Assembly: GCF_003918875.1 (NCBI RefSeq)
Contig: NW_025765324.1
Coordinates: forward strand, 1 to 64,000
DNA: 64,000 nt
Source: Haliotis rubra
Taxonomy: Eukaryota
Direction: 5' to 3'
Made by a program: the position numbers and the translations under genes. The notes below the pieces were generated by a model. The model was not told the DNA's origin. It made no database searches and saw only the letters and a program-made list of their open reading frames with translations. The stretch's first letter is position 1. Each line of letters starts with the position of its first letter. Shown here one piece after another: positions 1,501-39,977 of the stretch.

Positions 1501-2721
1501 CATTCGGTCCTTCTTGTGCCAAATTAAATAGATGTTGTCTTTGGATAATGGCTCAACAATTGCTACAATTCAATGTATATTTAATCACTGTTGCAAGTGA
1601 TTCACTTCAACTTCAATGTTTTAGGCTTCCGGAGAATGTTTGATCATAAACACCAGTAGAAAGAAGAAATAGAAAACTCGCCTCTACCCTTTACATATGG
1701 CCTTTACATCATGAAAACAGTCTTCTGTGTGTTCATAGATAATGTTACTGTTGCGTTAAAATCAATCGTGTCCGATTTGATAAATCTGTACTTTTTTATA
1801 GTGCATCCAGATAGAAATACTTCTCCTGTTAATTGCATCAGCGGTATGCAAACGGTTAGATTACATCATGAAATCAAGAAGTAAACTTCCCATGGAGTGT
1901 ACAAAATGATTGGTATTGCCATCAACTGTTATCGACTATTCATAGCATGTTCAATAGTAACTTATGATTGTAGACCTTTTCATTTTGTTTGTGTGATACA
2001 TAAACCGATAGCATATGCTAATGTAATGAAATTCCAACTGCTACGCAATCCCTTCTAGTATAGGCAGTAAGAATACTACAGCATGTGTTTGTTATTTATT
2101 CTTCAAGACCATGGTATCAATATTTGTTATCACAGAAACTTAGATATTCATCATCCAAAGGACAATGCGTGTTCCGTAAAGAACACTCGCTCAATTTCTA
2201 GGACAGGTTACATACTTGCATTCGAATCGAATACTGTGCACACTAGCTACTATTAGATGACTTACTGCACCCTAACACGGAAATATGACTCAACTCCGGA
2301 TATTTTCGGATTTCACTATGACATCATCAAGACCCTTCGTGGCAGCACAAATGGTATATTCGCATGAGACATGGAACCAAGTAAGAGATAGCCTGTATGA
2401 AATATGTCAAGCCTAAAATCCCTCCTCTCATATTCAATCTGATTTCGTCAGGACATTCTAAGCATATTTCATTAGTTGACACCACTGCTGGAAGCAAAAC
2501 TGATTACCAGTTAAGTGTTTGGATATCGTTGAATAACACATATATCCAGAGTTAATAATATGGAGACATATAGTAACTCGTCCATTTTGTAAACATTGAA
2601 TTCAGCTTTAAGATTCTCAAACAAAGCACAAATCGTTTGTATTTCAAGTTTTATTGAACCAATTGTATTGTCATGAGTATACAAAATAAATAGTCTTCTT
2701 CACACTGCAGGTGACAGTAAC

Positions 2722-3320
2722 TCAGTAGTAGCCGATTCCTGAAACAGAAAAAATAGTTACATATAAAATTGGGATTTATGGAAAAGTAACATGGAAATGT
2801 TGAAACTGCTTGCACCATAAACTATACCAAGCATTTCAAACAGCTGACAACAGTTTTACAGATGTTTATCAACTGACAACAGCTTATTTGCATAAAATAG
2901 TACTAATAAATACATGGGTACATGATATCATTTTATAAAAGTGAAGTTTAAAATGGGATAACAGAAGAAAGAATGACAGCATGTGTTGTGAAATACCTTT
3001 TCCTAGTCCGATTCCGTAGCCTGCCATTCCGTAGAGACCACCAATGGTCCTCCAAGTCCTCCAAGTCCTCCAAGTCCTCCATACAGACCTCCCATGCCGT
3101 ATCCGTATTTGCCTCCGTACAGACCGCCCATTCCTCCGTACAGACCGCCATAGCCTCCGTAAAGACCTCCCTGCATTCCACCTATTCCGTAGCCTATTCC
3201 GCCCATTCCGCCCATTCCTCCATACAACCCAGCCATTCCATATGCTCCATACAGACCGGTTGGCTCAGCAAAGGCGGTAACAGCCAGGCAGGCAACAAGG
3301 ACGACGACTATTTTCATCAT
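2722..3320 (-). pseudogene. Gly/Tyr-rich secreted protein, copy 1; +2 frameshift near 3043-3048 (possibly assembly error)
   Basis: Same structure as the other copies. CCACCAATGGTCCTCC replaces CCACCATGGCCTCC or CCACCAAGTCCTCC, giving a premature stop (...QATESD*). Confidence 0.75.
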
Positions 3321-6068
3321 TTTGAGTATCTGTTCAGTAACATAAAAATCATCTTCAAGACAGGAAAACAACATGTTATCATTACTCGTCTGGAGAATTG
3401 ACTTCACGCCACTCCTAATGAATAATGTTATCATTTTTCATTTCATATGCATCCACATACTGGAAAATTTACAAGAACGGTAAATATTCCTTACTTATTC
3501 GTACTTTGATGAATTGGATCAATGTAAAAGTTGAAAAGGAGAGGTGTGCAGCAGAAGAACGAAAACTTCAAAGTATACATGTTTACCACAGGCAAACCTT
3601 GACCTGGTACTTACAGTTTGGTGTTAACACGTATCTGTGTCTTAACAGCAGGTGAAAATAAGAGATGATAGAATACTTTCCCTCTCCTATATATATACAA
3701 TTGTAGGACTATATGTGATTGATTTACCTTGGGCTGGCCACTTCCAGGTAAGCAACACACCTTAACGTTAATGATGTAAACTGATCATTCTATTCGCCTC
3801 AAAGGTTCTGCCTGAGGTTATCACCCTAAGGCTATACATGTGTGTTGGTATAGATGAACGTTCATTTAGGAAGTAGAGGGCGGTATATAATAGGGCGAAG
3901 GTGTCTCTTCCTATCTTCTTCTCTCTACGGCATGGTTTAACTGCATTTAAACAACTTCCAGTTACCCAACGTTTAACCAGTATTAAGCAAATATTAGATA
4001 GTAGTTTGGGAGCTGTGTATCCATTACACATGTAATGGAGCAATGTAAAATCAGACATTATGATATATGTGCCTGAGACGAAATTACAAAATACGGGGCA
4101 ATTGAAGCAACGCGCTAGTACAGCGTCGCCACACTACAGCAGTATCACTGTGCTACAAGGGGTCACTATGCAAACATCTACGTGTAATACTGCAGCCTGT
4201 CCACACGATGACTGCATGCTTACTATACTGCAGAAATCCCAATACCCTAATATTCTCCCCGAATGTTAACAATCTCACCACACTGAAACAAAATACTACA
4301 ATAGCTTTATTTCCCAAATGTTATATACATATACTAGTGTCTTTTCACCAAGGGCCTGTCACTATCAATTGTCACAGCACGCATTTAGCTGTAAAAACAA
4401 AGCACCGATGTCTTCTGAAAACAGGATTAGGTTTCCCCTATGACATACAGCATGTTCCCTGGTATTTGTCGACTTTTCTTTGCATGTGTTTCTCACTGGT
4501 GTAGCAGAGGGTTAGGATACACTCACCTCCTTCGCGAACACTTTGTGTCATCACTATTTGATAGAAAGTCATGCACACTTTCCTAGGATATAGTCACAAT
4601 CGTACAGTGGACTCTGCCTTTAGTGGATATTCCTGACAATTACATAAAGGGTTGTGTCGCTTTATTTTACACCTATTTTCTTTGAAGTAACTGTGGATTT
4701 CTTTAATGATATCGATCTTCTGATGAAACAGAATTCGCTAATCATAAAGGGAACAATTGTACTGAAACATATACTGCTTATTAGCCAAGACACCAGGTGC
4801 TAGCCAACAGTTTGTGGCTGTAAATTCGTTTTTAATGTTTCATGACCTTTCCATTCGGTCCTTCTTGTGCCAAATTAAATAGATGTTGTCTTTGGATAAT
4901 GGCTCAACAATTGCTACAATTCAATGTATATTTAATCACTGTTGCAAGTGATTCACTTCAACTTGTTTTAGGCTTCCGGAGAATGTTTGATCATAAACAC
5001 CAGTAGAAAGAAGAAATAGAAAACTCGCCTCTACCCTTTACATATGGCCTTTTACATCATGAAAACAGTCTTCTGTGTGTTCATAGATAATGTTACTGTT
5101 GCGTTAAAATCAATCGTGTCCGATTTGATAAATCTGTACTTTTGATAGTGCATCCAGATAGAAATACTTCTCCTGTTAATTGCATCAGCGGTATGCAAAC
5201 GGTTAGATTACATCATGAAATCAAGAAGTAAACTTCCCATGGAGTGTACAAAATGATTGGTATTGCCATCAACTGTTATCGACTATTCATAGCATGTTCA
5301 ATAGTAACTTATGATTGTAGACCTTTTCATTTTGTTTGTGTGATACATAAACCGATAGCATATGCTAATGTAATGAAATTCCAACTGCTACGCAATCCCT
5401 TCTAGTATAGGCAGTAAGAATACTACAGCATGTGTTTGTTATTTATTCTTCAAGACCATGGTATCAATATTTGTTATCACAGAAACTTAGATATTCATCA
5501 TCCAAAGGACAATGCGTGTTCCGTAAAGAACACTCGCTCAATTTCTAGGACAGGTTACATACTTGCATTCGAATCGAATACTGTGCACACTAGCTACTAT
5601 TAGATGACTTACTGCACCCCAACACGGAAATATGACTCAACTCCGGATATTTTCGGATTTCACTATGACATCATCAAGACCCTTCGTGGCAGCACAAATG
5701 GTATATTCGCATGAGACATGGAACCAAGTAAGAGATAGCCTGTATGAAATATGTCAAGCCTAAAATCCCTCCTCTCATATTCAATCTGATTTCGTCAGGA
5801 CATTCTAAGCATATTTCATTAGTTGACACCACTGCTGGAAGCAAAACTGATTACCAGTTAAGTGTTTGGATATCGTTGAATAACACATATATCCAGAGTT
5901 AATAATATGGAGACATATAGTAACTCGTCCATTTTGTAAACATTGAATTCAGCTTTAAGATTCTCAAACAAAGCACAAATCGTTTGTATTTCAAGTTTTA
6001 TTGAACCAATTGTATTGTCATGAGTATACAAAATAAATAGTCTTCTTCACACTGCAGGTGACAGTAAC

Positions 6069-6665
6069 TCAGTAGTAGCCGATTCCTGAAACAGAAAAAA
6101 TAGTTACATATAAAATTGGGATTTATGGAAAAGTAACATGGAAATGTTGAAACTGCTTGCACCATAAACTATACCAAGCATTTCAAACAGCTGACAACAG
6201 TTTTACAGATGTTTATCAACTGACAACAGCTTATTTGCATAAAATAGTACTAATAAATACATGGGTACATGATATCATTTTATAAAAGTGAAGTTTAAAA
6301 TGGGATAACAGAAGAAAGAATGACAGCATGTGTTGTGAAATACCTTTTCCTAGTCCGATTCCGTAGCCTGCCATTCCGTAGAGACCACCATGGCCTCCAA
6401 GTCCTCCAAGTCCTCCAAGTCCTCCATACAGACCTCCCATGCCGTATCCGTATTTGCCTCCGTACAGACCGCCCATTCCTCCGTACAGACCGCCATAGCC
6501 TCCGTAAAGACCTCCCTGCATTCCACCTATTCCGTAGCCTATTCCGCCCATTCCGCCCATTCCTCCATACAACCCAGCCATTCCATATGCTCCATACAGA
6601 CCGGTTGGCTCAGCAAAGGCGGTAACAGCCAGGCAGGCAACAAGGACGACGACTATTTTCATCAT
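6069..6665 (-). CDS. Secreted Gly/Tyr/Met-rich repetitive protein, copy 2 (112 aa; coding exons 6344-6665 and 6069-6085)
   Basis: Acceptor TTACTGAACAG lies 9 nt upstream of CAAAATG. N-terminus MMKIVVVLVACLAVTAFA-EP is a hydrophobic signal peptide with an AxA site. Donor AAAG/GTATTT, 258-bp intron and acceptor TTTTTTCTGTTTCAG give ...GKGIGYY*. AATAAA lies ~70 nt downstream. Confidence 0.9.
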
Positions 6666-7034
6666 TTTGAGTATCTGTTCAGTAACATAAAAATCATCTT
6701 CAAGACAGGAAAACAACATGTTATCATTACTCGTCTGGAGAATTGACTTCACGCCACTCCTAATGAATAATGTTATCATTTTTCATTTCATATGCATCCA
6801 CATACTGGAAAATTTACAAGAACGGTAAATATTCCTTACTTATTCGTACTTTGATGAATTGGATCAATGTAAAAGTTGAAAAAGGAGAGGTGTGCAGCAG
6901 AAGAACGAAAACTTCAAAGTATACATGTTTACCACAGGCAAACCTTGACCTGGTACTTACAGTTTGGTGTTAACACGTATCTGTGTCTTAACAGCAGGTG
7001 AAAATAAGAGATGATAGAATACTTTCCCCTCTCC

Positions 7035-7044
7035 TATATATATA
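7035..7044 (-). promoter_or_regulatory. TATA-like box of array copy 2 (present in every unit), upstream of a non-coding exon 1
   Basis: TATATATATA lies ~75 nt upstream of the strong donor ACT/GTAAGT (intron 1 = 6675-6960). The equivalent position in the plus-strand copy reads TATATAAA. Confidence 0.6.
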
Positions 7045-9420
7045 CAATTGGTGGACTATATGTGATTGATTTACCTTGGGCTGGCCACTTCCAGGTAAGC
7101 AACACACCTTAACGTTAATGATGTAAACTGATCATTCTATTCGCCTCAAAGGTTCTGCCTGAGGTTATCACCCTAAGGCTATACATGTGTGTTGGTATAG
7201 ATGAACGTTCATTTAGGAAGTAGAGGGCGGTATATAATAGGGCGAAGGTGTCTCTTCCTATCTTTCTCTTCTCTCTACGGCATGGTTTAACTGCATTTAA
7301 ACAACTTCCAGTTACCCAACGTTTAACCAGTATTAAGCAAATATTAGATAGTAGTTTGGGAGCTGTGTATCCATTACACATGTAATGGAGCAATGTAAAA
7401 TCAGACATTATGATATATGTGCCTGAGACGAAATTACAAAATACGGGGCAATTGAAGCAACGCGCTAGTACAGCGTCGCCACACTACAGCAGTATCACTG
7501 TGCTACAAGGGGTCACTATGCAAACATCTACGTGTAATACTGCAGCCTGTCCACACGATGACTGCATGCTTACTATACTGCAGAAATCCCAATACCCTAA
7601 TATTCTCCCCGAATGTTAACAATCTCACCACACTGAAACAAAATACTACAATAGCTTTATTTCCCAAATGTTATATACATATACTAGTGTCTTTTCACCA
7701 AGGGCCTGTCACTATCAATTGTCACAGCACGCATTTAGCTGTAAAAAAACAAAGCACCGATGTCTTCTGAAAACAGGATTAGGTTTCCCCTATGACATAC
7801 AGCATGTTCCCTGGTATTTGTCGACTTTTCTTTGCATGTGTTTCTCACTGGTGTAGCAGAGGGGTTAGGATACACTCACCTCCTTCGCGAACACTTTGTG
7901 TCATCACTATTTGATAGAAAGTCATGCACACTTTCCTAGGATATAGTCACAATCGTACAGTGGACTCTGCCTTTAGTGGATATTCCTGACAATTACATAA
8001 AGGGTTGTGTCGCTTTATTTTACACCTATTTTCTTTGAAGTAACTGTGGATTTCTTAATGATATCGATCTTCTGATGAAACAGAATTCGCTAATCATAAA
8101 GGGAACAATTGTACTGAAACATATACTGCTTATTAGCCAAGACACCAGGTGCTAGCCAACAGTTTGTGGCTGTAAATTCGTTTTTTAATGTTTCATGACC
8201 TTTCCATTCGGTCCTTCTTGTGCCAAATTAAATAGATGTTGTCTTTGGATAATGGCTCAACAATTGCTACAATTCAATGTATATTTAATCACTGTTGCAA
8301 GTGATTCACTTCAACTTGTTTTAGGCTTCCGGAGAATGTTTGATCATAAACACCAGTAGAAAGAAGAAATAGAAAACTCGCCTCTACCCTTTACATATGG
8401 CCTTTACATCATGAAAACAGTCTTCTGTGTGTTCATAGATAATGTTACTGTTGCGTTAAAATCAATCGTGTCCGATTTGATAAATCTGTACTTTTGATAG
8501 TGCATCCAGATAGAAATACTTCTCCTGTTAATTGCATCAGCGGTATGCAAACGGTTAGATTACATCATGAAATCAAGAAGTAAACTTCCCATGGAGTGTA
8601 CAAAATGATTGGTATTGCCATCAACTGTTATCGACTATTCATAGCATGTTCAATAGTAACTTATGATTGTAGACCTTTTCATTTTGTTTGTGTGATACAT
8701 AAACCGATAGCATATGCTAATGTAATGAAATTCCAACTGCTACGCAATCCCTTCTAGTATAGGCAGTAAGAATACTACAGCATGTGTTTGTTATTTATTC
8801 TTCAAGACCATGGTATCAATATTTGTTATCACAGAAACTTAGATATTCATCATCCAAAGGACAATGCGTGTTCCGTAAAGAACACTCGCTCAATTTCTAG
8901 GACAGGTTACATACTTGCATTCGAATCGAATACTGTGCACACTAGCTACTATTAGATGACTTACTGCACCCCAACACGGAAATATGACTCAACTCCGGAT
9001 ATTTTCGGATTTCACTATGACATCATCAAGACCCTTCGTGGCAGCACAAATGGTATATTCGCATGAGACATGGAACCAAGTAAGAGATAGCCTGTATGAA
9101 ATATGTCAAGCCTAAAATCCCTCCTCTCATATTCAATCTGATTTCGTCAGGACATTCTAAGCATATTTCATTAGTTGACACCACTGCTGGAAGCAAAACT
9201 GATTACCAGTTAAGTGTTTGGATATCGTTGAATAACACATATATCCAGAGTTAATAATATGGAGACATATAGTAACTCGTCCATTTTGTAAACATTGAAT
9301 TCAGCTTTAAGATTCTCAAACAAAGCACAAATCGTTTGTATTTCAAGTTTTATTGAACCAATTGTATTGTCATGAGTATACAAAATAAATAGTCTTCTTC
9401 ACACTGCAGGTGACAGTAAC

Positions 9421-10019
9421 TCAGTAGTAGCCGATTCCTGAAACAGAAAAAATAGTTACATATAAAATTGGGATTTATGGAAAAGTAACATGGAAATGTT
9501 GAAACTGCTTGCACCATAAACTATACCAAGCATTTCAAACAGCTGACAACAGTTTTACAGATGTTTATCAACTGACAACAGCTTATTTGCATAAAATAGT
9601 ACTAATAAATACATGGGTACATGATATCATTTTATAAAAGTGAAGTTTAAAATGGGATAACAGAAGAAAGAATGACAGCATGTGTTGTGAAATACCTTTT
9701 CCTAGTCCGATTCCGTAGCCTGCCATTCCGTAGAGACCACCAAGTCCTCCAAGTCCTCCAAGTCCTCCAAGTCCTCCATACAGACCTCCCATGCCGTATC
9801 CGTATTTGCCTCCGTACAGACCGCCCATTCCTCCGTACAGACCGCCATAGCCTCCGTAAAGACCTCCCTGCATTCCACCTATTCCGTAGCCCCTATTCCG
9901 CCCATTCCGCCCATTCCTCCATACAACCCAGCCATTCCATATGCTCCATACAGACCGGTTGGCTCAGCAAAGGCGGTAACAGCCAGGCAGGCAACAAGGA
10001 CGACGACTATTTTCATCAT
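9421..10019 (-). pseudogene. Gly/Tyr-rich secreted protein, copy 3; +2 C frameshift at ~9890 (possibly homopolymer error)
   Basis: GTAGCCCCTATT versus GTAGCCTATT in the other copies. The ORF track shows the frame split (9879-10133 and 9583-9873). Confidence 0.75.
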
Positions 10020-12772
10020 TTTGAGTATCTGTTCAGTAACATAAAAATCATCTTCAAGACAGGAAAACAACATGTTATCATTACTCGTCTGGAGAATTGA
10101 CTTCACGCCACTCCTAATGAATAATGTTATCATTTTTCATTTCATATGCATCCACATACTGGAAAATTTACAAGAACGGTAAATATTCCTTACTTATTCG
10201 TACTTTGATGAATTGGATCAATGTAAAAGTTGAAAAAGGAGAGGTGTGCAGCAGAAGAACGAAAACTTCAAAGTATACATGTTTACCACAGGCAAACCTT
10301 GACCTGGTACTTACAGTTTGGTGTTAACACGTATCTGTGTCTTAACAGCAGGTGAAAATAAGAGATGATAGAATACTTTCCCCGTCTCCTATATATATAC
10401 AATTGGTGGACTATATGTGTTTGATTTACCTTGGGCTGGCCACTTCCAGGTAAGCAACACACCTTAACGTTAATGATGTAAACTGATCATTCTATTCGCC
10501 TCAAAGGTTCTGCCTGAGGTTATCACCCTAAGGCTATACATGTGTGTTGGTATAGATGAACGTTCATTTAGGAAGTAGAGGGCGGTATATAATAGGGCGA
10601 AGGTGTCTCTTCCTATCTTTCTCTTCTCTCTACGGCATGGTTTAACTGCATCTAAACAACTTCCAGTTACCCAACGTTTAACCAGTATTAAGCAAATATT
10701 AGATAGTAGTTTGGGAGCTGTGTATCCATTACACATGTAATGGAGCAATGTAAAATCAGACATTATGATATATGTGCCTGAGACGAAATTACAAAATACG
10801 GGGCAATTGAAGCAACGCGCTAGTACAGCGTCGCCACACTACAGCAGTATCACTGTGCTACAAGGGGTCACTATGCAAACATCTACGTGTAATACTGCAG
10901 CCTGTCCACACGATGACTGCATGCTTACTATACTGCAGAAATCCCAATACCCTAATATTCTCCCCGAATGTTAACAATCTCACCACACTGAAACAAAATA
11001 CTACAATAGCTTTATTTCCCAAATGTTATATACATATACTAGTGTCTTTTCACCAAGGGCCTGTCACTATCAATTGTCACAGCACGCATTTAGCTGTAAA
11101 AAACAAAGCACCGATGTCTTCTGAAAACAGGATTAGGTTTCCCCTATGACATACAGCATGTTCCCTGGTATTTGTCGACTTTTCTTTGCATGTGTTTCTC
11201 ACTGGTGTAGCAGAGGGGTTAGGATACACTCACCTCCTTCGCGAACACTTTGTGTCATCACTATTTGATAGAAAGTCATGCACACTTTCCTAGGATATAG
11301 TCACAATCGTACAGTGGACTCTGCCTTTAGTGGATATTCCTGACAATTACATAAAGGGTTGTGTCGCTTTATTTTACACCTATTTTCTTTGAAGTAACTG
11401 TGGATTTCTTAATGATATCGATCTTCTGATGAAACAGAATTCGCTAATCATAAAGGGAACAATTGTACTGAAACATATACTGCTTATTAGCCAAGACACC
11501 AGGTGCTAGCCAACAGTTTGTGGCTGTAAATTCGTTTTAATGTTTCATGACCTTTCCATTCGGTCCTTCTTGTGCCAAATTAAATAGATGTTGTCTTTGG
11601 ATAATGGCTCAACAATTGCTACAATTCAATGTATATTTAATCACTGTTGCAAGTGATTCACTTCAACTTGTTTTAGGCTTCCGGAGAATGTTTGATCATA
11701 AACACCAGTAGAAAGAAGAAATAGAAAACTCGCCTCTACCCTTTACATATGGCCTTTACATCATGAAAACAGTCTTCTGTGTGTTCATAGATAATGTTAC
11801 TGTTGCGTTAAAATCAATCGTGTCCGATTTGATAAATCTGTACTTTTGATAGTGCATCCAGATAGAAATACTTCTCCTGTTAATTGCATCAGCGGTATGC
11901 AAACGGTTAGATTACATCATGAAATCAAGAAGTAAACTTCCCATGGAGTGTACAAAATGATTGGTATTGCCATCAACTGTTATCGACTATTCATAGCATG
12001 TTCAATAGTAACTTATGATTGTAGACCTTTTCATTTTGTTTGTGTGATACATAAACCGATAGCATATGCTAATGTAATGAAATTCCAACTGCTACGCAAT
12101 CCCTTCTAGTATAGGCAGTAAGAATACTACAGCATGTGTTTGTTATTTATTCTTCAAGACCATGGTATCAATATTTGTTATCACAGAAACTTAGATATTC
12201 ATCATCCAAAGGACAATGCGTGTTCCGTAAAGAACACTCGCTCAATTTCTAGGACAGGTTACATACTTGCATTCGAATCGAATACTGTGCACACTAGCTA
12301 CTATTAGATGACTTACTGCACCCCAACACGGAAATATGACTCAACTCCGGATATTTTCGGATTTCACTATGACATCATCAAGACCCTTCGTGGCAGCACA
12401 AATGGTATATTCGCATGAGACATGGAACCAAGTAAGAGATAGCCTGTATGAAATATGTCAAGCCTAAAATCCCTCCTCTCATATTCAATCTGATTTCGTC
12501 AGGACATTCTAAGCATATTTCATTAGTTGACACCACTGCTGGAAGCAAAACTGATTACCAGTTAAGTGTTTGGATATCGTTGAATAACACATATATCCAG
12601 AGTTAATAATATGGAGACATATAGTAACTCGTCCATTTTGTAAACATTGAATTCAGCTTTAAGATTCTCAAACAAAGCACAAATCGTTTGTATTTCAAGT
12701 TTTATTGAACCAATTGTATTGTCATGAGTATACAAAATAAATAGTCTTCTTCACACTGCAGGTGACAGTAAC

Positions 12773-13378
12773 TCAGTAGTAGCCGATTCCTGAAACAGAA
12801 AAAATAGTTACATATAAAATTGGGATTTATGGAAAAGTAACATGGAAATGTTGAAACTGCTTGCACCATAAACTATACCAAGCATTTCAAACAGCTGACA
12901 ACAGTTTTACAGATGTTTATCAACTGACAACAGCTTATTTGCATAAAATAGTACTAATAAATACATGGGTACATGATATCATTTTATAAAAGTGAAGTTT
13001 AAAATGGGATAACAGAAGAAAGAATGACAGCATGTGTTGTGAAATACCTTTTCCTAGTCCGATTCCGTAGCCTGCCATTCCGTAGAGACCACCATGGCCT
13101 CCAAGTCCTCCAAGTCCTCCAAGTCCTCCAAGTCCTCCATACAGACCTCCCATGCCGTATCCGTATTTGCCTCCGTACAGACCGCCCATTCCTCCGTACA
13201 GACCGCCATAGCCTCCGTAAAGACCTCCCTGCATTCCACCTATTCCGTAGCCTATTCCGCCCATTCCGCCCATTCCTCCATACAACCCAGCCATTCCATA
13301 TGCTCCATACAGACCGGTTGGCTCAGCAAAGGCGGTAACAGCCAGGCAGGCAACAAGGACGACGACTATTTTCATCAT
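12773..13378 (-). CDS. Secreted Gly/Tyr/Met-rich protein, copy 4 (115 aa; GGLx4+GGH)
   Basis: Intact frame and the same splice signals as copy 2; one extra 9-bp GGL repeat. Confidence 0.9.
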
Positions 13379-29555: not shown

Positions 29556-30143
29556 TCAGTAGTAGCCGATTCCTGAAACAGAAAAAATAGTTACATATAA
29601 AATTGGGATTTATGGAAAAGTAACATGGAAATGTTGAAACTGCTTGCACCATAAACTATACCAAGCATTTCAAACAGCTGACAACAGTTTTACAGATGTT
29701 TATCAACTGACAACAGCTTATTTGCATAAAATAGTACTAATAAATACATGGGTACATGATATCATTTTATAAAAGTGAAGTTTAAAATGGGATAACAGAA
29801 GAAAGAATGACAGCATGTGTTGTGAAATACCTTTTCCTAGTCCGATTCCGTAGCCTGCCATTCCGTAGAGACCACCATGGCCTCCAAGTCCTCCAAGTCC
29901 TCCATACAGACCTCCCATGCCGTATCCGTATTTGCCTCCGTACAGACCGCCCATTCCTCCGTACAGACCGCCATAGCCTCCGTAAAGACCTCCCTGCATT
30001 CCACCTATTCCGTAGCCTATTCCGCCCATTCCGCCCATTCCTCCATACAACCCAGCCATTCCATATGCTCCATACAGACCGGTTGGCTCAGCAAAGGCGG
30101 TAACAGCCAGGCAGGCAACAAGGACGACGACTATTTTCATCAT
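29556..30143 (-). CDS. Secreted Gly/Tyr/Met-rich protein, copy 9 (109 aa; GGLx2+GGH)
   Basis: Intact; one fewer GGL repeat. Confidence 0.9.
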
Positions 30144-32899
30144 TTTGAGTATCTGTTCAGTAACATAAAAATCATCTTCAAGACAGGAAAACAACATGTT
30201 ATCATTACTCGTCTGGAGAATTGACTTCACGCCACTCCTAATGAATAATGTTATCATTTGTCATTTCATATGCATCCACATACTGGAAAATTTACAAGAA
30301 CGGTAAATATTCCTTACTTATTCGTACTTTGATGAATTGGATCAATGTAAAAGTTGAAAAAGGAGAGGTGTGCAGCAGAAGAACGAAAACTTCAAAGTAT
30401 ACATGTTTACCACAGGCAAACCTTGACCTGGTACTTACAGTTTGGTGTTAACACGTATCTGTGTCTTAACAGCAGGTGAAAATAAGAGATGATAGAATAC
30501 TTTCCCCCCTCTCCTATATATATATACAATTGGTGGACTATATGTGATTGATATACCTTGGGCTGGCCACTTCCAGGTAAGCAACACACCTTAACGTTAA
30601 TGATGTAAACTGATCATTCTATTCGCCTCAAAGGTTCTGCCTGAGGTTATCACCCTAAGGCTATACATGTGTGTTGGTATAGATGAACGTTCATTTAGGA
30701 AGTAGAGGGCGGTATATAATAGGGCGAAGGTGTCTCTTCCTATCTTTCTCTTCTCTCTACGGCATGGTTTAACTGCATTTAAACAACTTCCAGTTACCCA
30801 ACGTTTAACCAGTATTAAGCAAATATTAGATAGTAGTTTGGGAGCTGTGTATCCATTACACATGTAATGGAGCAATGTAAAATCAGACATTATGATATAT
30901 GTGCCTGAGACGAAATTACAAAATACGGGGCAATTGAAGCAACGCGCTAGTACAGCGTCGCCACACTACAGCAGTATCACTGTGCTACAAGGGGTAACTA
31001 TGCAAACATCTACGTGTAATACTGCAGCCTGTCCACACGATGACTGCATGCTTACTATACTGCAGAAATCCCAATACCCTAATATTCTCCCCGAATGTTA
31101 ACAATCTCACCACACTGAAACAAAATACTACAATAGCTTTATTTCCCAAATGTTATATACATATACTAGTGTCTTTTCACCAAGGGCCTGTCACTATCAA
31201 TTGTCACAGCACGCATTTAGCTGTAAAAAACAAAGCACCGATGTCTTCTGAAAACAGGATTAGGTTTCCCCTATGACATACAGCATGTTCCCTGGTATTT
31301 GTCGACTTTTCTTTGCATGTGTTTCTCACTGGTGTAGCAGAGGGGTTAGGATACACTCACCTCCTTCGCGAACACTTTGTGTCATCACTATTTGATAGAA
31401 AGTCATGCACACTTTCCTAGGATATAGTCACAATCGTACAGTGGACTCTGCCTTTAGTGGATATTCCTGACAATTACATAAAGGGTTGTGTCGCTTTATT
31501 TTACACCTATTTTCTTTGAAGTAACTGTGGATTTCTTAATGATATCGATCTTCTGATGAAACAGAATTCGCTAATCATAAAGGGAACAATTGTACTGAAC
31601 ACATACTGCTTATTAGCCAAGACACCAGGTGCTAGCCAACAGTTTGTGGCTGTAAATTCGTTTTTAATGTTTCATGACCTTTCCATTCGGTCCTTCTTGT
31701 GCCAAATTAAATAGATGTTGTCTTTGGATAATGGCTCAACAATTGCTACAATTCAATGTATATTTAATCACTGTTGCAAGTGATTCACTTCAACTTGTTT
31801 TAGGCTTCCGGAGAATGTTTGATCATAAACACCAGTAGAAAGAAGAAATAGAAAACTCGCCTCTACCCTTTACATATGGCCTTTACATCATGAAAACAGT
31901 CTTCTGTGTGTTCATAGATAATGTTACTGTTGCGTTAAAATCAATCGTGTCCGATTTGATAAATCTGTACTTTTGATAGTGCATCCAGATAGAAATACTT
32001 CTCCTGTTAATTGCATCAGCGGTATGCAAACGGTTAGATTACATCATGAAATCAAGAAGTAAACTTCCCATGGAGTGTACAAAATGATTGGTATTGCCAT
32101 CAACTGTTATCGACTATTCATAGCATGTTCAATAGTAACTTATGATTGTAGACCTTTTCATTTTGTTTGTGTGATACATAAACCGATAGCATATGCTAAT
32201 GTAATGAAATTCCAACTGCTACGCAATCCCTTCTAGTATAGGCAGTAAGAATACTACAGCATGTGTTTGTTATTTATTCTTCAAGACCATGGTATCAATA
32301 TTTGTTATCACAGAAACTTAGATATTCATCATCCAAAGGACAATGCGTGTTCCGTAAAGAACACTCGCTCAATTTCTAGGACAGGTTACATACTTGCATT
32401 CGAATCGAATACTGTGCACACTAGCTACTATTAGATGACTTACTGCACCCCAACACGGAAATATGACTCAACTCCGGATATTTTCGGATTTCACTATGAC
32501 ATCATCAAGACCCTTCGTGGCAGCACAAATGGTATATTCGCATGAGACATGGAACCAAGTAAGAGATAGCCTGTATGAAATATGTCAAGCCTAAAATCCC
32601 TCCTCTCATATTCAATCTGATTTCGTCAGGACATTCTAAGCATATTTCATTAGTTGACACCACTGCTGGAAGCAAAACTGATTACCAGTTAAGTGTTTGG
32701 ATATCGTTGAATAACACATATATCCAGAGTTAATAATATGGAGACATATAGTAACTCGTCCATTTTGTAAACATTGAATTCAGCTTTAAGATTCTCAAAC
32801 AAAGCACAAATCGTTTGTATTTCAAGTTTTATTGAACCAATTGTATTGTCATGAGTATACAAAATAAATAGTCTTCTTCACACTGCAGGTGACAGTAAC

Positions 32900-33495
32900 T
32901 CAGTAGTAGCCGATTCCTGAAACAGAAAAATAGTTACATATAAAATTGGGATTTATGGAAAAGTAACATGGAAATGTTGAAACTGCTTGCACCATAAACT
33001 ATACCAAGCATTTCAAACAGCTGACAACAGTTTTACAGATGTTTATCAACTGACAACAGCTTATTTGCATAAAATAGTACTAATAAATACATGGGTACAT
33101 GATATCATTTTATAAAAGTGAAGTTTAAAATGGGATAACAGAAGAAAGAATGACAGCATGTGTTGTGAAATACCTTTTCCTAGTCCGATTCCGTAGCCTG
33201 CCATTCCGTAGAGACCACCAAGTCCTCCAAGTCCTCCAAGTCCTCCATACAGACCTCCCATGCCGTATCCGTATTTGCCTCCGTACAGACCGCCCATTCC
33301 TCCGTACAGACCGCCATAGCCTCCGTAAAGACCTCCCTGCATTCCACCTATTCCGTAGCCTATTCCGCCCATTCCGCCCATTCCGCCCATTCCTCCATAC
33401 AACCCAGCCATTCCATATGCTCCATACAGACCGGTTGGCTCAGCAAAGGCGGTAACAGCCAGGCAGGCAACAAGGACGACGACTATTTTCATCAT
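32900..33495 (-). CDS. Secreted Gly/Tyr/Met-rich protein, copy 10 (112 aa; GGMx3, no His)
   Basis: Intact; terminal copy of the array. Confidence 0.9.
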
Positions 33496-34578
33496 TTTGA
33501 GTATCTGTTCAGTAACATAAAAATCATCTTCAAGACAGGAAAACAACATGTTATCATTACTCGTCTGGAGAATTGACTTCACGCCACTCCTAATGAATAA
33601 TGTTATCATTTGTCATTTCATATGCATCCACATACTGGAAAATTTACAAGAACGGTAAATATTCCTTACTTATTCGTACTTTGATGAATTGGATCAATGT
33701 AAAAGTTGAAAAAGGAGAGGTGTGCAGCAGAAGAACGAAAACTTCAAAGTATACATGTTTACCACAGGCAATACCTTGACCTGGTACTTACAGTTTGGTG
33801 TTAACACGTATCTGTGTCTTAACAGCAGGTGAAAATAAGAGATGATAGAATACTTTCCCCCTCTCCTATATATATACAATTGGTGGACTATATGTGATTG
33901 ATTTACCTTGGGCTGGCCACTTCCAGGTAAGCAACACACCTTAACGTTAATGATGTAAACTGATCATTCTATTCGCCTCAAAGGTTCTGCCTGAGGTTAT
34001 CACCCTAAGGCTATACATGTGTGTTGGTATAGATGAACGTTCATTTAGGAAGTAGAGGGCGGTATATAATAGGGCGAAGGTGTCTCTTCCTATCTTTCTC
34101 CTCTCTCTACGGCATGGTTTAACTGCATTTAAACAACTTCCAGTTACCCAACGTTTAACCAGTATTAAGCAAATATTAGATAGTAGTTTGGGAGCTGTGT
34201 ATCCATTACACATGTAATGGAGCAATGTAAAATCAGACATTATGATATATGTGCCTGAGACGAAATTACAAAATACGGGGCAACTGAAGCAACGCGCTAG
34301 TACAGCGTCGCCACACTACAGCAGTATCACTGTGCTACAAGGGGTCACTATGCAAACATCTACGTGTAATACTGCAGCCTGTCCACACGATGACTGCATG
34401 CTTACTATACTGCAGAAATCCCAATACCCTAATATTCTCCCCGAATGTTAACAATCTCACCACACTGAAACAAAATACTACAATAGCTTTATTTCCCAAA
34501 TGTTATATATAAGGTTCTGCCTAGGGTTATTACCCTAAGGGCATACAAGAGTGTTGGTATACATGAACAGTCACTTAA

Positions 34579-35233
34579 GGTTGCTTCACACTTATTTCGA
34601 ATTTACAGCAATCGGGGAGAATCGGCCAGAAAAAAATAGTTCCAAAATTCGAACCGCATTCGTGAGACAATTTTTTCAAGCTTTGCTATCTGACGTTTCT
34701 GTGACAGATGGTGACGTTTTTATGCGATTCGGCGGTGTTCTGATGACGGCAGGGCTCATTTGAAGAGCATTCGGGACATTCTGAATGCATTCCAGGTGTA
34801 TTCGAGGTACATTGGAGCTGTATTTCAACTTCAATCGAAATGTTCCGATACATTTGAAGAATATTTGAACTCCAGCAGCAATCAAGATACATTCCGACTC
34901 ATTCGAGGCATTCTGACAGGATTTGAAGTGGCTTGTCTTTTCTATTCTCCCTCGAATATGTTCAGATTACTTAGAATGCAGTCAGAATGCAGTAAGAATA
35001 CTTAGAATGCAGTTCGAATGCACCTCAAAAGCCGGTCGATATTTTTCCACTTCGAATGTACCTCGAAAGTTTTGAACATGTTCAAAACATTCGGGCATAT
35101 TATATTACATGAATTGACCCGAATAGTTGGAATGCATTCGGAATGCAGTAAGAAGTTTTAGAATTCAGTTCGAATATCCAGGAATCTCCAGAAATTTTCA
35201 TTCCGACAGCATTCCGGCTCATTCCGCCGTAAT
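34579..35233. mobile_element. PIF/Harbinger-like MITE, left copy, missing its inner terminus
   Basis: Begins TAA|GGTTGCTTCACAC and is rich in CATTCGAATG-type palindromic words. Reverse complement of 37270-37920; lacks the last ~15 bp. Confidence 0.6.
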
Positions 35234-37254: not shown

Positions 37255-37920
37255 GACCCCCGTCACACAATTACGGCGGAATGAGCCGGAATGCTGTCGG
37301 AATGAAAATTTCTGGAGATTCATGGAAATTCGAACTGAATTCTAAAACTTCTTACTGCATTCCGAATGCATTCCAACTATTCGGGTCAATTCATGTAATA
37401 TGCCCGAATGTTTTGAACATGTTCAAAACTTTCGAGGTACATTCGAAGTGGAAAAATATCGACCGGCTTTTGAGGTGCATTCGAACTGCATTCTAAGTAT
37501 TCTTACTGCATTCTGACTGCATTCTAAGTAATCTGAACATATTCGAGGGAGAATAGAAAAGACAAGCCACTTCAAATCCTGTCAGAATGCCTCGAATGAG
37601 TCGGAATGTATCTTGATTGCTGCTGGAGTTCAAATATTCTTCAAATGTATCGGAACATTTCGATTGAAGTTGAAATACAGCTCCAATGTACCTCGAATAC
37701 ACCTGGAATGCATTCAGAATGTCCCGAATGCTCTTCAAATGAGCCCTGCCGTCATCAGAACACCGCCGAATCGCATAAAAACGTCACCATCTGTCACAGA
37801 AACGTCAGATAGCAAAGCTTGAAAAAATTGTCTCACGAATGCGGTTCGAATTTTTGGAACTATTTTTTTCTGGCCGATTCTCCTCGATTGCTGTAAATTC
37901 GAAATAAGTGTGAAGCAGCC
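37255..37920. mobile_element. PIF/Harbinger-like MITE (~666 bp), complete copy
   Basis: Imperfect TIRs GACCCCCGTCACAC / GTGTGAAGCAGCC flanked by TAA/TTA. It splits the upstream motif CTACTTCCTAA|ATGAATGTTCAT, which is intact at ~38448-38470. Superfamily inferred from the TWA target and ...TCACAC termini. Confidence 0.65.
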
Positions 37921-38672
37921 TTAGTGACTGTTCATGTATACCAACACTCTTGTATGCCCTTAGGGTAGGTAATAACCCCAGGCAGAGCCTTATATATAAC
38001 ATTTGGGAAATAAAGCTATTGTAGTATTTTGTTTCAGTGTGGTGAGATTGTTAACATTCGGGGAGAATATTAGGGTATTGGGATTTCTGCAGTATAGTAA
38101 GCATGCAGTCATCGTGTGGACAGGCTGCAGTATTACACGTAGATGTTTGCATATTGACCCCTTGTAGCACAGTGATACTGCTGTAGTGTGGCGACGCTGT
38201 ACTAGCGCGTTGCTTCAATTGTCCCGTATTTTGTAATTTCGTCTCAGGCAAATATGTCATAATGTCTGATTTTACATTGCTCCATTACATGTGTAATGGA
38301 TACACAGCTCCCAAACTACTATCTAATATTTGCTTAATACTGGTTAAACGTTGGGTAACTGGAAGTTGTTTAAATGCAGTTAAACCATGCCGTAGAGAGA
38401 GGAGAAAGATAGGAAGAGACACCTTTCGCCCTATTATATACCGCCCTCTACTTCCTAAATGAATGTTCATGTATAAATGCGAGTAGTGACTATTGTTAGT
38501 GACAGTCCATTTTGGTAAAATAGATACCTGTACATGTATGTAACATACAGCCAGTATAGTCGTGGGATTGTTGACATTCAGGGTGAATATCATGCTGTTG
38601 GGATTTCTGCAGAGTAGTAAGCAGGCGGTCATCGTGTGGATTGACTGCAGCATCAAACGTAGTGATACTGCT

Positions 38673-38766
38673 AGAGAGAGAGAGAGAGACAGAGAGAGAA
38701 GGAGAGAGAGAGGGAGAGAGAGAAAGAGAGAGAGAGAATGAGAGAGTGAGTGATAGAGAGAGAGAG
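38673..38766. repeat. Imperfect (GA)n microsatellite
   Basis: AGAGAG tract upstream of the plus-strand copy. Confidence 0.9.
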
Positions 38767-38970
38767 GAGCACTCTATTATATACCGCCCTCTACTCCCGA
38801 AATGAATGTTCATGTATACCAACACACATGTCCACCCTCAGGGTGATAACCTCAGGCAGACCCGTTGAGGCGAAAACAAATGATCAGCTTACATCATTAA
38901 CGTTAAGGTGTGTTGCTTACCTGGAAGTGGCCAGCCCAAGGTAAATCAATCACATATAGTCCACCAGTTG

Positions 38971-38978
38971 TATATAAA
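38971..38978 (+). promoter_or_regulatory. TATA box of the inverted gene copy; non-coding exon 1 ~39000-39051, intron 1 39052-39325
   Basis: TATATAAA, then donor ACT/GTAAGT at 39052 and acceptor GAACAG at 39325, 9 nt before the ATG. Confidence 0.65.
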
Positions 38979-39334
38979 GGAGAGGGAAAAGGTATTCTAT
39001 CATCTCTTAATCACCTGCTGTTAAGACACAGATACGCGTTAACACCAAACTGTAAGTACCGTTTCAAGGTTTGCTGTGGTAAATATGTATACCTTGAAGT
39101 TGTCGTTCTTCTGCTGCACAACTCTCCTTTATCAACTTTACATTGGTCCAATTCATCAAAGTGCGAATAAGTAAGGCATCTGTACATTTGGAAGTATGTG
39201 GATGCACATGAAATAAAAAAATGATAACATTATTCATTAGGAGTGGCGTGAAGTCAATTCTCCAGACGAGTAATGATAACATGTTGTTTTCCTGTCTTGA
39301 AGATGATTTTTATGTTACTGAACAGATACTCAAA

Positions 39335-39905
39335 ATGATGAAGATAGTCGCCGTCCTTGTTGCCTGCCTGGCTGTTACCGCCTTTGCTGAGCCAACCGGT
39401 CTGTATGGAGCATATGGAATGGCTGGGTTGTATGGAGGAATGGGCGGAATAGGCTACGGAATAGGTGGAATGCAGGGAGGTCTTTACGGAGGCTATGGCG
39501 GTCTGTACGGAGGAATGGGCGGTCTGTACGGAGGCAAATACGGATACGGCATGGGAGGTCTGTATGGAGGACTTGGAGGACTTGGAGGCCATGGTGGTCT
39601 CTACGGAATGGCAGGCTACGGAATCGGACTAGGAAAAGGTATTTCACAACACATGCTGTCATTCTTTCTTCTGTTATCCCATTTTAAACTTCACTTGTAT
39701 AAAATGATATCATGTATTTATTAGTACTATTTTATGCAAATAAGCTGTTGTCAGTTGATAAACATCTGTAAAACTGTTGTCAGCTGTTTGAAATGCTTGG
39801 TATAGTTTATGGTGCAAGCAGTTTCAACATTTCCATGTTACTTTTCCATAAATCCCAATTTTATATGTAACTATTTTTTCTGTTTCAGGAATCGGCTACT
39901 ACTGA
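39335..39905 (+). CDS. Secreted Gly/Tyr/Met-rich protein, inverted copy 11 (106 aa; coding exons 39335-39638 and 39889-39905)
   Basis: MMKIVAVLVACLAVTAFAEPTGLYG...GLGK|GIGYY*; 250-bp GT-AG intron with a polypyrimidine tract. Confidence 0.9.
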
Positions 39906-39971
39906 GTTACTGTCACCTGCAGTGTGAAGAAGACTATTTATTTTGTATACTCATGACAATACAATTGGTTC

Positions 39972-39977
39972 AATAAA
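39972..39977 (+). terminator. Polyadenylation signal of copy 11
   Basis: AATAAA 66 nt after the stop, followed by GT-rich TTTGTGCTTTGTTTG; conserved in all array copies. Confidence 0.7.

What the first reader, a model, noticed from the sequence alone, without database searches (positions are those of the whole stretch)
1501..39977. Eleven-copy amplified cluster of a small secreted Gly/Tyr/Met-rich protein gene
Seen: ten tandem 3.35-kb units plus one inverted copy. Each has a TATA-like box, a non-coding exon 1, a coding exon 2 and a 17-nt coding exon 3, giving 106-115 aa proteins: an 18-aa signal peptide and a mature part made almost entirely of G, Y, L and M. Established: near-identical tandem arrays usually reflect dosage demand (histone, rDNA, structural-protein genes). 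Gly/Tyr-rich secreted proteins build molluscan extracellular materials (shematrins, suckerins), and some Gly-rich peptides are antimicrobial (acanthoscurrin). Inference: a recently amplified, high-output structural or defence protein locus that I cannot assign to a named gene.
Basis: partly seen in the sequence, partly recalled or inferred. Interest (0 to 1): 0.8.

Follow-up and report, generated by a model that had tools for sequence, protein, structure and literature searches.

The report
Abalone Gly/Tyr-rich secreted protein gene array
An abalone genome carries a long head-to-tail array of near-identical small genes for a secreted, unstructured glycine/tyrosine-rich protein; the array is older and probably much larger than it looks, and its product is most likely a mass-produced building protein for the shell's organic coat, though its tissue is unproven.

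Summary
There are ten direct 3.35-kb units (1500-34509) and one inverted copy (38429-39977), each with a 3-exon minus-strand gene for a 106-115 aa protein: an 18-aa signal peptide and a mature part of 51% Gly, 15% Tyr, 12% Leu and 8% Met.

Corrections:
- Copies 1, 3 and 5 are frameshifted in this assembly, probably by assembly error.
- The window is the first 64 kb of its contig, and bases 1-1499 are a garbled further unit.
- Another contig ends in the same array, and short-read contig depth suggests roughly 40-90 units.
- The array is not recent. Haliotis asinina has arrays of the same unit (3.18-3.24 kb, collinear across the unit junction, about 80% identity). Copies cluster by species, which indicates concerted evolution.

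RefSeq auto-names the relatives 'glycine-rich protein-like', 'neuropeptide-like protein 31' and 'shematrin-like protein 2'. The H. asinina model ends ...GLGKGIGYY, which confirms the second intron. An exhaustive HMMER search found the family only in Haliotis, and I found no paper describing it.

The closest described analogue, probably a distant paralogue, is Has-tsfgr1, which is expressed at the mantle edge.

Function is inferred, not shown. A tyrosine-cross-linkable structural precursor (periostracin/shematrin-like) is most likely; a glycine-rich antimicrobial peptide is the main rival. No RNA data were available.

This scan noted another abalone-only Gly/Tyr array elsewhere in this genome (s1-320414).

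The parts
1..1499 (-). Garbled, deletion-ridden further copy of the unit at the very start of the contig (an assembly artefact, not biology)
   Evidence: aligns to unit positions ~540-2950 with about 1020 unit bases missing, 451 of them T; composition A556 C426 G341 T176; the window is C434:1-64000.
1500..34509 (-). Direct tandem array: nine full units and a tenth truncated at unit position ~2827
   Evidence: The unit junction (8203->4851) is also seen in short-read contigs of two species labels.
2650..3895 (-). Gene copy 1 (polyA signal to TATA). Exon 2 is 324 nt, so it is frameshifted near its 3' end (GGAGGACCATTGG instead of GGAGGCCATGG)
5997..7242 (-). Gene copy 2, intact, 112 aa. TATA 7239-7231; exon 1 about 7205-7075 (start inferred); intron 1 7074-6675; exon 2 6674-6344 (ATG 6665); intron 2 6343-6086; exon 3 from 6085 (stop 6071-6069); AATAAA 6002-5997
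   Evidence: Splice sites and TATA are conserved in H. asinina.
9349..10597 (-). Gene copy 3. Frameshifted by an extra GG in a G-run (AGGC to AGGGGC)
12701..13956 (-). Gene copy 4, intact, 115 aa (one extra GGL)
16061..17308 (-). Gene copy 5. Frameshifted by one extra G in a G-run
19413..20659 (-). Gene copy 6, intact, 112 aa
22766..24020 (-). Gene copy 7, intact, 115 aa (one extra GGM)
26124..27378 (-). Gene copy 8, intact, 115 aa
29484..30724 (-). Gene copy 9, intact, 109 aa (one GGL fewer)
32828..34074 (-). Gene copy 10, intact, 112 aa (extra GGM, lacks GGH)
34077..35112 (.). Left arm of the head-to-head palindrome (upstream region of copy 10 plus non-unit sequence)
   Evidence: I1 and I2, 98% complementary to 37386-38425
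37386..38425 (.). Right arm of the palindrome
38429..39977 (+). Inverted gene copy, intact, 106 aa: ATG 39335, exon 2 to 39638, exon 3 39889-39905, polyA signal ~39972
   Evidence: about 92% identical to the array units

Best explanation
This is the right-hand end of a large, old, concertedly evolving tandem array of an abalone-specific 3-exon gene.

Each unit (~3.35 kb) has its own TATA promoter and yields a ~570-nt mRNA. The product is a ~9-kDa secreted, intrinsically disordered, weakly basic and hydrophobic protein of about 51% Gly, 15% Tyr, 12% Leu and 8% Met. It is built from GGLYGG/GGM/GGL repeats and ends in Tyr-Tyr.

Unequal crossing-over and gene conversion keep the units nearly identical within a species, while the whole unit drifts between species. 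Slippage of 9-nt repeats produces length isoforms.

The many copies (tens, not eleven) most likely serve bulk output. The protein is most likely a structural precursor that mantle-edge epithelium secretes into the organic shell coat (periostracum or organic framework). There its tyrosines would be oxidised and cross-linked by tyrosinase or peroxidase, as in periostracin and shematrins.

Shown: the array, the gene structure, conservation, restriction to Haliotis, and predicted disorder. Inferred: expression, tissue, cross-linking, and the copy number beyond the assembly.
For: Array and copy number:
- Unit coordinates and identities.
- A short-read contig bridging the junction has depth 5854, and other invariant contigs 5917-7372. 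A 254-nt contig that fits the single-copy pseudogene on C2515:498k has depth 79. That gives about 74-93 units, or about half if that contig represents one haplotype.
- The window is the contig start.
- Contig C2515 ends in seven or so more units in the same orientation, 96-99% identical. Those nearest its end share the window's MMKIVVV variant.

It is a real gene:
- All length variants are multiples of 9 nt.
- dN/dS against H. asinina is 0.35-0.57.
- RefSeq models in H. asinina and H. cracherodii have the same ..GKGIGYY end.
- TATA and splice sites are conserved.

Age and concerted evolution:
- H. asinina has arrays of at least 7 and at least 16 units plus an inverted copy.
- The unit is collinear across its junction.
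- Copies form species clades in the tree.
- All units of the sister array on C2433 lack unit positions 2927-3124.

Protein:
- Pfam gives nothing.
- The AF2 model shows only the signal helix; the rest has pLDDT below 50.
- Composition and pI 8.2.

Structural reading:
- Periostracin is basic, 55% Gly, 10% Tyr, and carries DOPA (PMC3821031).
- Has-tsfgr1 is a 114-aa Gly/Leu/Tyr protein with a signal peptide and a Tyr end, expressed at the shell field and outer mantle fold (PMC2034539).
- Its probable H. rubra counterpart (L022) has a similar signal peptide (..VLVACL..A|EP). It also has the same ..K|G phase-1 intron before a tiny Tyr-terminated last exon.
- Tyrosinase and peroxidase are abundant in abalone shell matrix (PMC6003135).
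Against: - No RNA run holds the locus, so transcription, both introns and the tissue are unproven here.
- None of four motif strings of the protein occurs in the 28 supplementary files of the H. laevigata nacre/prismatic shell proteome. So it is not among the identified proteins of the cleaned adult calcified layers. It has only two Lys and no Arg, would give very long tryptic peptides, and periostracum is usually removed, so this is weak evidence.
- The link to Has-tsfgr1 rests on architecture and a short signal-peptide likeness. BLASTP finds no alignment, and I could not retrieve the H. asinina sequence itself.
- The depth-based copy number rests on one baseline contig.
- NCBI's best SwissProt likeness for one orthologue is a nematode antimicrobial peptide.
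Confidence: 0.5

Rival explanations
1. Glycine-rich antimicrobial or defence peptide cluster. The small secreted Gly/Tyr/Met peptides act at epithelia or in haemolymph, like the nematode NLP-29/31 and caenacin clusters, acanthoscurrin or armadillidins. Tandem amplification would provide a fast, high-level inducible output.
For: RefSeq named one H. asinina orthologue 'neuropeptide-like protein 31'. By my own knowledge, C. elegans NLP-31 is a Gly/Tyr-rich antimicrobial peptide encoded in a tandem cluster. The protein is small, Cys-free and slightly cationic at pI 8.2. Armadillidins are about 50% Gly and one contains GGLYGG (PMC7017220). The protein is absent from the adult shell proteome files.
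Against: Net charge is only about +1 (2 Lys, 1 His, 1 Glu), whereas armadillidins have pI 11-12. It has no amphipathic or Arg/His-rich motif and no dibasic processing sites. No nematode or arthropod AMP came up in the exhaustive HMMER search. The architecture resembles the mantle gene Has-tsfgr1.
Confidence: 0.2
2. Structural or adhesive biomaterial of a tissue other than the shell-forming mantle. Candidates are the radula or jaw matrix, the larval operculum, pedal adhesive mucus, or a coacervate-forming glue. The Gly/Tyr/Leu repeats would act like the amorphous blocks of suckerins.
For: The GGLYGG repeat is the core of the suckerin amorphous module YGYGGLYGGLYGGLGYG (PMC11931252). The language-model neighbours are arthropod glycine-rich cuticle proteins, but scores are at most 0.78, so these are leads only. 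The model is disordered. The protein is absent from the adult shell proteome files.
Against: The Ala/His-rich beta-sheet module that defines suckerins is missing. There is no homology to any cephalopod or arthropod protein. There are no tissue data at all. The only described relative-like gene is mantle-specific (PMC2034539).
Confidence: 0.2
3. A transcriptionally silent, satellite-like repeat that merely contains a decaying gene, or an assembler-made over-expansion of one or two copies.
For: Three of eleven copies are frameshifted in the assembly. No RNA run was found. The contig start is garbled.
Against: Short-read contigs from independent runs show very high depth and the tandem junction. 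The ORF, signal peptide, splice sites and TATA are conserved over about 20% neutral divergence with dN/dS below 0.6. All natural length variants are in frame. The frameshifts sit in homopolymer runs, typical of long-read error. RefSeq gene models exist in two congeners.
Confidence: 0.05

Closest known systems
[quoted passage not shown] 2007, PMC2034539)
   Same: Abalone gene of similar size (114 aa) with a 17-18-aa signal peptide, a mature part made of Gly/Leu/Tyr repeats, and a C-terminus ending in Tyr. Its probable H. rubra counterpart (L022) shares the ..VLVACL..A|EP signal region. It also shares the phase-1 intron after ..K|G followed by a tiny last coding exon.
   Different: The repeat motif is GGYGLGL rather than GGLYGG/GGM, there is no Met, and the end is ..KGY rather than ..KGIGYY. 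It is a single locus in this genome, not an array. BLASTP gives no alignment. It is at most a distant paralogue.
RefSeq models 'glycine-rich protein-like' / 'neuropeptide-like protein 31' (H. asinina XP_067657837-849) and 'shematrin-like protein 2' (H. cracherodii XP_071095146)
   Same: True orthologues or paralogues: 72-82% identity, the same signal peptide, the same ..GLGKGIGYY end, and the same 3.2-kb tandem arrays.
   Different: These are automatic names only. Several models are fusions of many copies (346, 979 and 1967 aa). I found no publication or functional data.
Shematrins / KRMPs of pearl oysters
   Same: Secreted Gly/Tyr-rich repetitive proteins ending in Tyr, encoded by multigene families and expressed at the mantle edge (as described in PMC2034539 and PMC4944945).
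   Different: No detectable sequence homology. Shematrins are larger and, by my own knowledge, end in a basic RKKKY-type motif that is absent here. The lineage is bivalve.
Periostracin of Mytilus edulis
   Same: Composition and charge: basic and water-insoluble, 55% Gly and 10% Tyr with DOPA (PMC3821031), against 51% Gly, 15% Tyr and pI 8.2 here.
   Different: Periostracin is 20 kDa and was never sequenced, so the comparison is by composition only. Its Leu/Met content is unknown to me.
Suckerins (squid sucker ring teeth)
   Same: The GGLYGG motif of the amorphous module (PMC11931252).
   Different: Lacks the Ala/Thr/His-rich beta-sheet module and the block-copolymer layout. No homology.
C. elegans nlp-29/nlp-31 and cnc clusters
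   Same: Tandem clusters of genes for small secreted Gly/Tyr(/Met)-rich peptides (own knowledge). NCBI naming points there.
   Different: No HMMER-detectable homology. The nematode clusters hold a handful of diverged genes, not tens of near-identical 3.35-kb units. Inducibility is untested here.

Membership tests
Haliotis 'GKGIGYY' Gly/Tyr-rich secreted protein family (RefSeq glycine-rich protein-like / shematrin-like protein 2) | Signal peptide MMK(I/V)..LVACLAV.AFA|EP followed by GGLYGG-type repeats | tested here: met
   19 of the first 20 columns are invariant across H. rubra and H. asinina members (position 6 is V or A)
Haliotis 'GKGIGYY' Gly/Tyr-rich secreted protein family (RefSeq glycine-rich protein-like / shematrin-like protein 2) | Exon 2 ends ..GK|G (phase 1), and a 17-nt coding last exon gives IGYY* | tested here: met
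   (all 11 copies). P0001 and P0007 end GKGIGYY
Haliotis 'GKGIGYY' Gly/Tyr-rich secreted protein family (RefSeq glycine-rich protein-like / shematrin-like protein 2) | Arranged in 3.2-3.4-kb tandem arrays | tested here: met
Shematrin | Detectable sequence homology to Pinctada shematrins | tested here: not met
   The exhaustive phmmer search of 1.84 billion representatives returned only Haliotis proteins and one spurious bacterial repeat protein
Shematrin | Signal peptide, Gly-rich repeats and a C-terminal motif ending in Tyr | tested here: inconclusive
   The signal peptide, the repeats and the terminal Tyr are present. The basic RKKKY-like tail, recalled from memory, is absent
Shematrin | Mantle-edge expression and presence in the prismatic layer | not testable with these tools
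   No RNA run. Not in the H. laevigata shell proteome files
Suckerin | Alternating Ala/Thr/His-rich beta-sheet modules and Gly/Tyr/Leu amorphous modules | tested here: not met
   Only the Gly/Tyr/Leu type is present. The mature protein has 3 Ala, 1 His and 1 Thr
Nematode NLP/CNC glycine-tyrosine antimicrobial peptides | Sequence homology | tested here: not met
   No nematode hit at E <= 0.001
Nematode NLP/CNC glycine-tyrosine antimicrobial peptides | Induction by infection or wounding, and antimicrobial activity | not testable with these tools
   Needs challenge RNA-seq and peptide assays
Has-tsfgr1-type mantle Gly/Leu/Tyr proteins | 17-aa signal, GGYGLGL repeats, C-terminal GYKGY | tested here: not met
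   The window protein has GGLYGG/GGM repeats and ends GIGYY. The gene that fits the description lies elsewhere, at G000:C6 (L022)
Has-tsfgr1-type mantle Gly/Leu/Tyr proteins | Shared gene architecture (ATG about 10 nt after the acceptor, ..K|G phase-1 intron, tiny Tyr-ending last exon) | tested here: met
Periostracin-class periostracum precursors | Basic, about 55% Gly, about 10% Tyr | tested here: met
   51% Gly, 15% Tyr, pI 8.2, against PMC3821031
Periostracin-class periostracum precursors | DOPA content and presence in periostracum | not testable with these tools
   Needs protein chemistry

The most novel reading that the evidence does not exclude
The array encodes the gastropod counterpart of the never-sequenced periostracin class of tyrosine-tanned periostracum precursors. 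At roughly 40-90 near-identical units it would be one of the largest protein-coding tandem arrays in a mollusc, evolving in concert like histone or rDNA arrays. It would then be a case where a structural shell-coat protein is supplied by gene dosage rather than by a strong single gene.
Probability: 0.25. Interest if true: 0.6.

Novelty: new member of a known kind. Interest (0 to 1): 0.45.

Why it matters
Small repetitive low-complexity secreted proteins are a main ingredient of mollusc hard parts. They are poorly catalogued because they evade trypsin-based proteomics, BLAST and short-read assembly.

This locus gives a clean, genus-wide example with a defined gene model. It shows clear concerted evolution of a protein-coding array, and several sister arrays lie at contig ends, which shows that such arrays break abalone assemblies.

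If the mantle-edge or periostracum reading is right, the locus supplies a sequence for a protein class known for decades only by composition. It would also supply a simple Gly/Tyr/Leu/Met polymer of interest for cross-linkable biomaterials. If the defence reading is right, it would be a new mollusc antimicrobial peptide family.

For genome users the practical point is this: the copy number, the three 'pseudogenes' and the first 1.5 kb of the contig should not be taken at face value.

Tried and rejected
- Pfam scan of three exon-2 translations at E <= 10: no family.
- Word-index protein search: only two H. asinina clusters.
- Exhaustive phmmer: four hits. Three are Haliotis; the fourth is a bacterial repeat protein I regard as spurious.
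- ESM Atlas feature search: arthropod glycine-rich cuticle proteins at scores of 0.78 or less, below the level that means anything.
- RNA evidence: the one run search found only DNA-like holders. All four runs laid cover intergenic parts too and show no splice joints. The run labelled 'RNA?' looks like a low-coverage DNA skim.
- Bacterial promoter/terminator scan: irrelevant for a eukaryote and at chance level.
- BLASTP of the window protein against the tsfgr1-like ORF: nothing, probably because of low-complexity masking.
- Word search with that ORF: only compositional hits in unrelated animals, and no H. asinina orthologue retrieved.
- Flank synteny between the window and the H. asinina 5.7-Mb array: nothing beyond the gene parts and dispersed repeats.
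- Literature: no paper in the library holds 'shematrin-like' with a Haliotis member of this family. None holds the motifs GIGYY, LYGGMGG or GGLYGGYG in a mollusc context. One search was wasted by a loose term setting.
- The spliced (joined) protein was not sent to any search or folding tool. Exon 2 was searched by reference, and the 17-nt exon 3 is too short to search. The join was made only inside a script, to check the reading frame.

Full report
**1. The observation**

The window is the first 64 kb of contig C434 of a 1.378-Gb, 2855-contig assembly.

- An exact anchor at the unit start occurs ten times, at 1500, 4851, 8204, 11556, 14916, 18267, 21620, 24979, 28338 and 31683. Periods are 3345-3360 nt.
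- Units 1-9 differ from one another by at most 15 substitutions and a few indels.
- Unit 10 follows the canonical unit only to 34509.
- One further copy of the gene-bearing part lies inverted at about 37.4-40.0 kb. It is head to head with unit 10 and flanked by 98%-complementary arms, 34077-35112 and 37386-38425.

So 'ten tandem units plus one inverted copy' is correct.

**2. The gene model**

Each unit carries a minus-strand gene. For copy 2 the parts are:

| Part | Coordinates |
|---|---|
| TATTATATA box | 7239-7231 |
| Non-coding exon 1 | to 7075, donor CCAAG\|GTAAAT |
| Intron 1 | 400 nt |
| Exon 2 | 6674-6344, ATG at 6665 |
| Intron 2 | 258 nt, AAAAG\|GTATTT ... TTTCAG\| |
| Exon 3 | from 6085; 17 coding nt give ..K-G-I-G-Y-Y-stop |
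| AATAAA | 6002-5997 |

- The predicted proteins are 106 aa (inverted copy), 109, 112 and 115 aa. This holds for 8 of the 11 copies only.
- Copies 1, 3 and 5 have exon 2 lengths of 324, 324 and 323 nt and are out of frame.
- The alignment shows an extra GG and an extra G inside G-runs in copies 3 and 5. In copy 1 the site reads like a mash of the two natural variants GGAGGCCATGG and GGAGGACTTGG. These look like long-read or polishing errors, but I could not prove that.
- All other differences between copies are +/-9-nt steps (GGM or GGL repeats) or a His/Leu variant, and all are in frame.

**3. The contig start and the true size of the array**

- Bases 1-1499 are not foreign sequence. They align to the unit with about 1020 of roughly 2400 unit bases missing, 451 of them T. 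The composition is very T-poor. This is what an uncorrected read at a contig end looks like. The array therefore runs off the contig.
- A six-frame search of the whole assembly finds the same gene on the last 25 kb of contig C2515, up to its last base. It lies in the same orientation and at 96-99% unit identity. The units nearest that end carry the window's MMKIVVV variant.
- In the tree the C434 and C2515 copies form one clade. The two contigs most likely flank one array that the assembler could not cross.
- Independent short-read contigs (run X1, same species label) include a 379-nt contig that bridges the unit junction 8203->4851 at word depth 5854. Other invariant pieces have depths of 5917-7372.
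- A 254-nt contig with 15 differences and 7 gaps has depth 79. It fits the single assembled pseudogene copy at C2515:498k, which shows 16 mismatches and 6 gaps over the same stretch.
- Taking 79 as the single-copy depth gives about 74-93 units. If that contig represents only one haplotype, the figure halves. This is a rough estimate from one baseline, but it excludes '1-2 copies' and makes '11' a lower bound.
- A 5-Mb low-coverage data set of another species label still assembled seven pieces of the unit. That fits high copy number there too.

**4. Relatives**

- Pfam finds nothing.
- The word-index search and the exhaustive HMMER search of 1.84 billion representatives return only Haliotis proteins, plus one bacterial repeat protein that I regard as spurious.
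- The H. asinina proteins are named 'glycine-rich protein-like' and 'neuropeptide-like protein 31'. They are 101 aa, 72-82% identical, and end GLGKGIGYY.
- H. cracherodii has 'shematrin-like protein 2' and 'spidroin-1-like'. These are fused models of several copies of a second subtype that ends the same way.
- In H. asinina the genes sit in arrays on one chromosome. One has at least 7 genes at 3183-nt spacing. The other has 16 at 3238-nt spacing plus one inverted copy, covered by a single 1967-aa fused model.
- The whole H. rubra-type unit aligns with the H. asinina unit at about 80% identity, collinearly across the unit junction. The tandem arrangement therefore predates the split of these species.
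- The tandem joint is also seen in contigs of a second species label, and in modified form in a third.
- Nevertheless all type-A copies of this genome (C434, C2515, C2433, C1001, C2289) group apart from all H. asinina copies. All five units of the C2433 array lack unit positions 2927-3124, which every C434/C2515 unit has. This is the signature of concerted evolution, not of recent amplification.
- The genome holds at least two more diverged subtypes with the same signal peptide, again in arrays and twice at contig ends (C80, C2775, C14, C1001).

**5. Is it a functional gene?**

- Between species dN/dS is 0.35-0.57 over 95 alignable codons, with dS about 0.2.
- The signal-peptide part of exon 2 is the best conserved 100 nt of the unit, at 92%.
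- The TATA box, both donors and both acceptors are conserved.
- Natural length variation is in frame.

Direct transcript evidence is missing.

**6. The protein**

- After an 18-aa signal peptide (MMKIVVVLVACLAVTAFA|EP) the mature chain is about 51% Gly, 15% Tyr, 12% Leu and 8% Met. It has two Lys, one Glu, one His, and no Cys, Asp, Ser or Arg.
- Its pI is 8.2, GRAVY is +0.2, and its mass is about 8-9 kDa.
- AlphaFold models only the signal helix. Everything else has pLDDT below 50.
- There are no dibasic processing sites.

**7. What it most likely does**

The composition matches periostracin, the soluble precursor of tanned mussel periostracum. Periostracin is basic, 55% Gly and 10% Tyr, carries DOPA, and was never sequenced (PMC3821031).

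The closest described gene is Has-tsfgr1 of H. asinina. It is 114 aa with a 17-aa signal, GGYGLGL repeats and a C-terminal GYKGY. [quoted passage not shown]

A degenerate pattern for that motif hits one place in this genome, C6 at about 33.8 kb. The gene there fits the published description:

- a 17-aa signal MNSVIVLVACLVAAAVA|EP, then 15 residues, then GGYGLG(L) repeats;
- an ATG 12 nt after an acceptor;
- an exon ending ..GRK|G in phase 1;
- a tiny last exon giving ..KGY-stop.

That is the same architecture as the window family (..GK|G + IGYY-stop), with a similar signal region. I therefore read the window family as a distant, amplified paralogue of a known mantle-edge gene. This is an inference. 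BLASTP gives no alignment, and I could not obtain the H. asinina sequence.

Tyrosinase and peroxidase are abundant in abalone shell matrix (PMC6003135). That makes Tyr cross-linking plausible.

Against a role in the adult calcified layers: none of four motif strings occurs in the 28 supplementary files of the H. laevigata shell proteome. That fits a periostracal, juvenile or non-shell role, or simply poor detectability with trypsin.

**8. Rivals**

- **Glycine-rich antimicrobial peptide.** This reading is suggested by NCBI's 'neuropeptide-like protein 31' name, the small size, and the clustered genes. It is weakened by the near-neutral charge: armadillidins have pI 11-12. It is also weakened by the absence of homology.
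- **Non-shell biomaterial or adhesive.** This is suggested by the suckerin-type GGLYGG motif (PMC11931252). However, the defining beta-sheet module of suckerins is absent.
- **Silent satellite or assembly artefact.** This is very unlikely given depth, conservation and the RefSeq models.

**9. Novelty**

The kind is known: lineage-restricted, repetitive Gly/Tyr-rich secreted proteins from mollusc secretory epithelia, often in multigene clusters. The family itself has been auto-annotated in two congeners, but I found no description of it in the searchable literature.

What is new:

- the defined gene model;
- the scale and age of the array;
- the clear concerted evolution;
- the link to Has-tsfgr1;
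- the periostracin-like composition.

Another note of this scan (s1-320414) reports a different abalone-only array of secreted Gly/Tyr/His proteins in the same genome and calls the genome blacklip abalone. I confirmed only the genus, through the protein hits.

**10. Procedure notes**

- The joined (spliced) protein was never sent to a search or folding tool. Exon 2 was used by reference, and the join was made only inside a script to check the frame.
- No N stretches occur in the window.

Noticed in passing
window 1-1499: The contig starts with a T-poor copy of the array unit with roughly 40% of its bases deleted (A556 C426 G341 T176). It looks like an unpolished long-read end. The last ~900 bases of contig C2515 are similarly degraded, at 83% identity to the unit.
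   Followed up: yes
L022 (G000:C6:32354-35388), gene at L022 1369-2520 +: Single-copy gene fitting the published description of Has-tsfgr1: 17-aa signal, GGYGLG(L) repeats and a ..KGY end. It has the same exon/intron architecture as the window family.
   Followed up: partly
G000:C2775:373-385 kb (contig end), C80:4-11 kb (contig start), C14:844-864 kb, C1001:686-772 kb: Further arrays of two more diverged subtypes with the same signal peptide, e.g. MMKIIALVACLAVAAFAEPLSYG...GGLYGGYG... . Several sit at contig ends, so these arrays repeatedly break the assembly.
   Followed up: partly
G000:C2433:562-578 kb (L018, L019): Sister array of at least 5 units, ~3.15 kb each and 94% identical. Every unit lacks the window unit's positions 2927-3124. 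Part of that segment (about 2970-3180) matches a repeat dispersed over many contigs.
   Followed up: partly
window 41124-41532, 44217-45750, 49350-50031, 58477-62446: Four minisatellites downstream of the array: 15-mer x28, 174/343-mer x9/4.5, 42-mer x16, and 31-mer x129 (4 kb). The last gives long spurious ORFs.
   Followed up: no
window 41722-42570 (-): 282-aa ORF that is not low-complexity (MCANVCVWLDHTFLCCRYGVKAIDEYKENLK...). It may be an exon or single-exon gene next to the array. I did not search it.
   Followed up: no
L015 (H. asinina CM074540.1:5.69-5.78 Mb): RefSeq models one 66.6-kb, 1967-aa 'PE-PGRS54-like' gene across about 16-20 tandem copies, a fused mis-annotation. This array also has a single inverted copy ahead of it, as in the window.
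   Followed up: partly
runs X11, X13: Two seawater metagenome runs hold a small share (5-6%) of the unit's words. This could be abalone environmental DNA or larvae, made visible by the high copy number.
   Followed up: no
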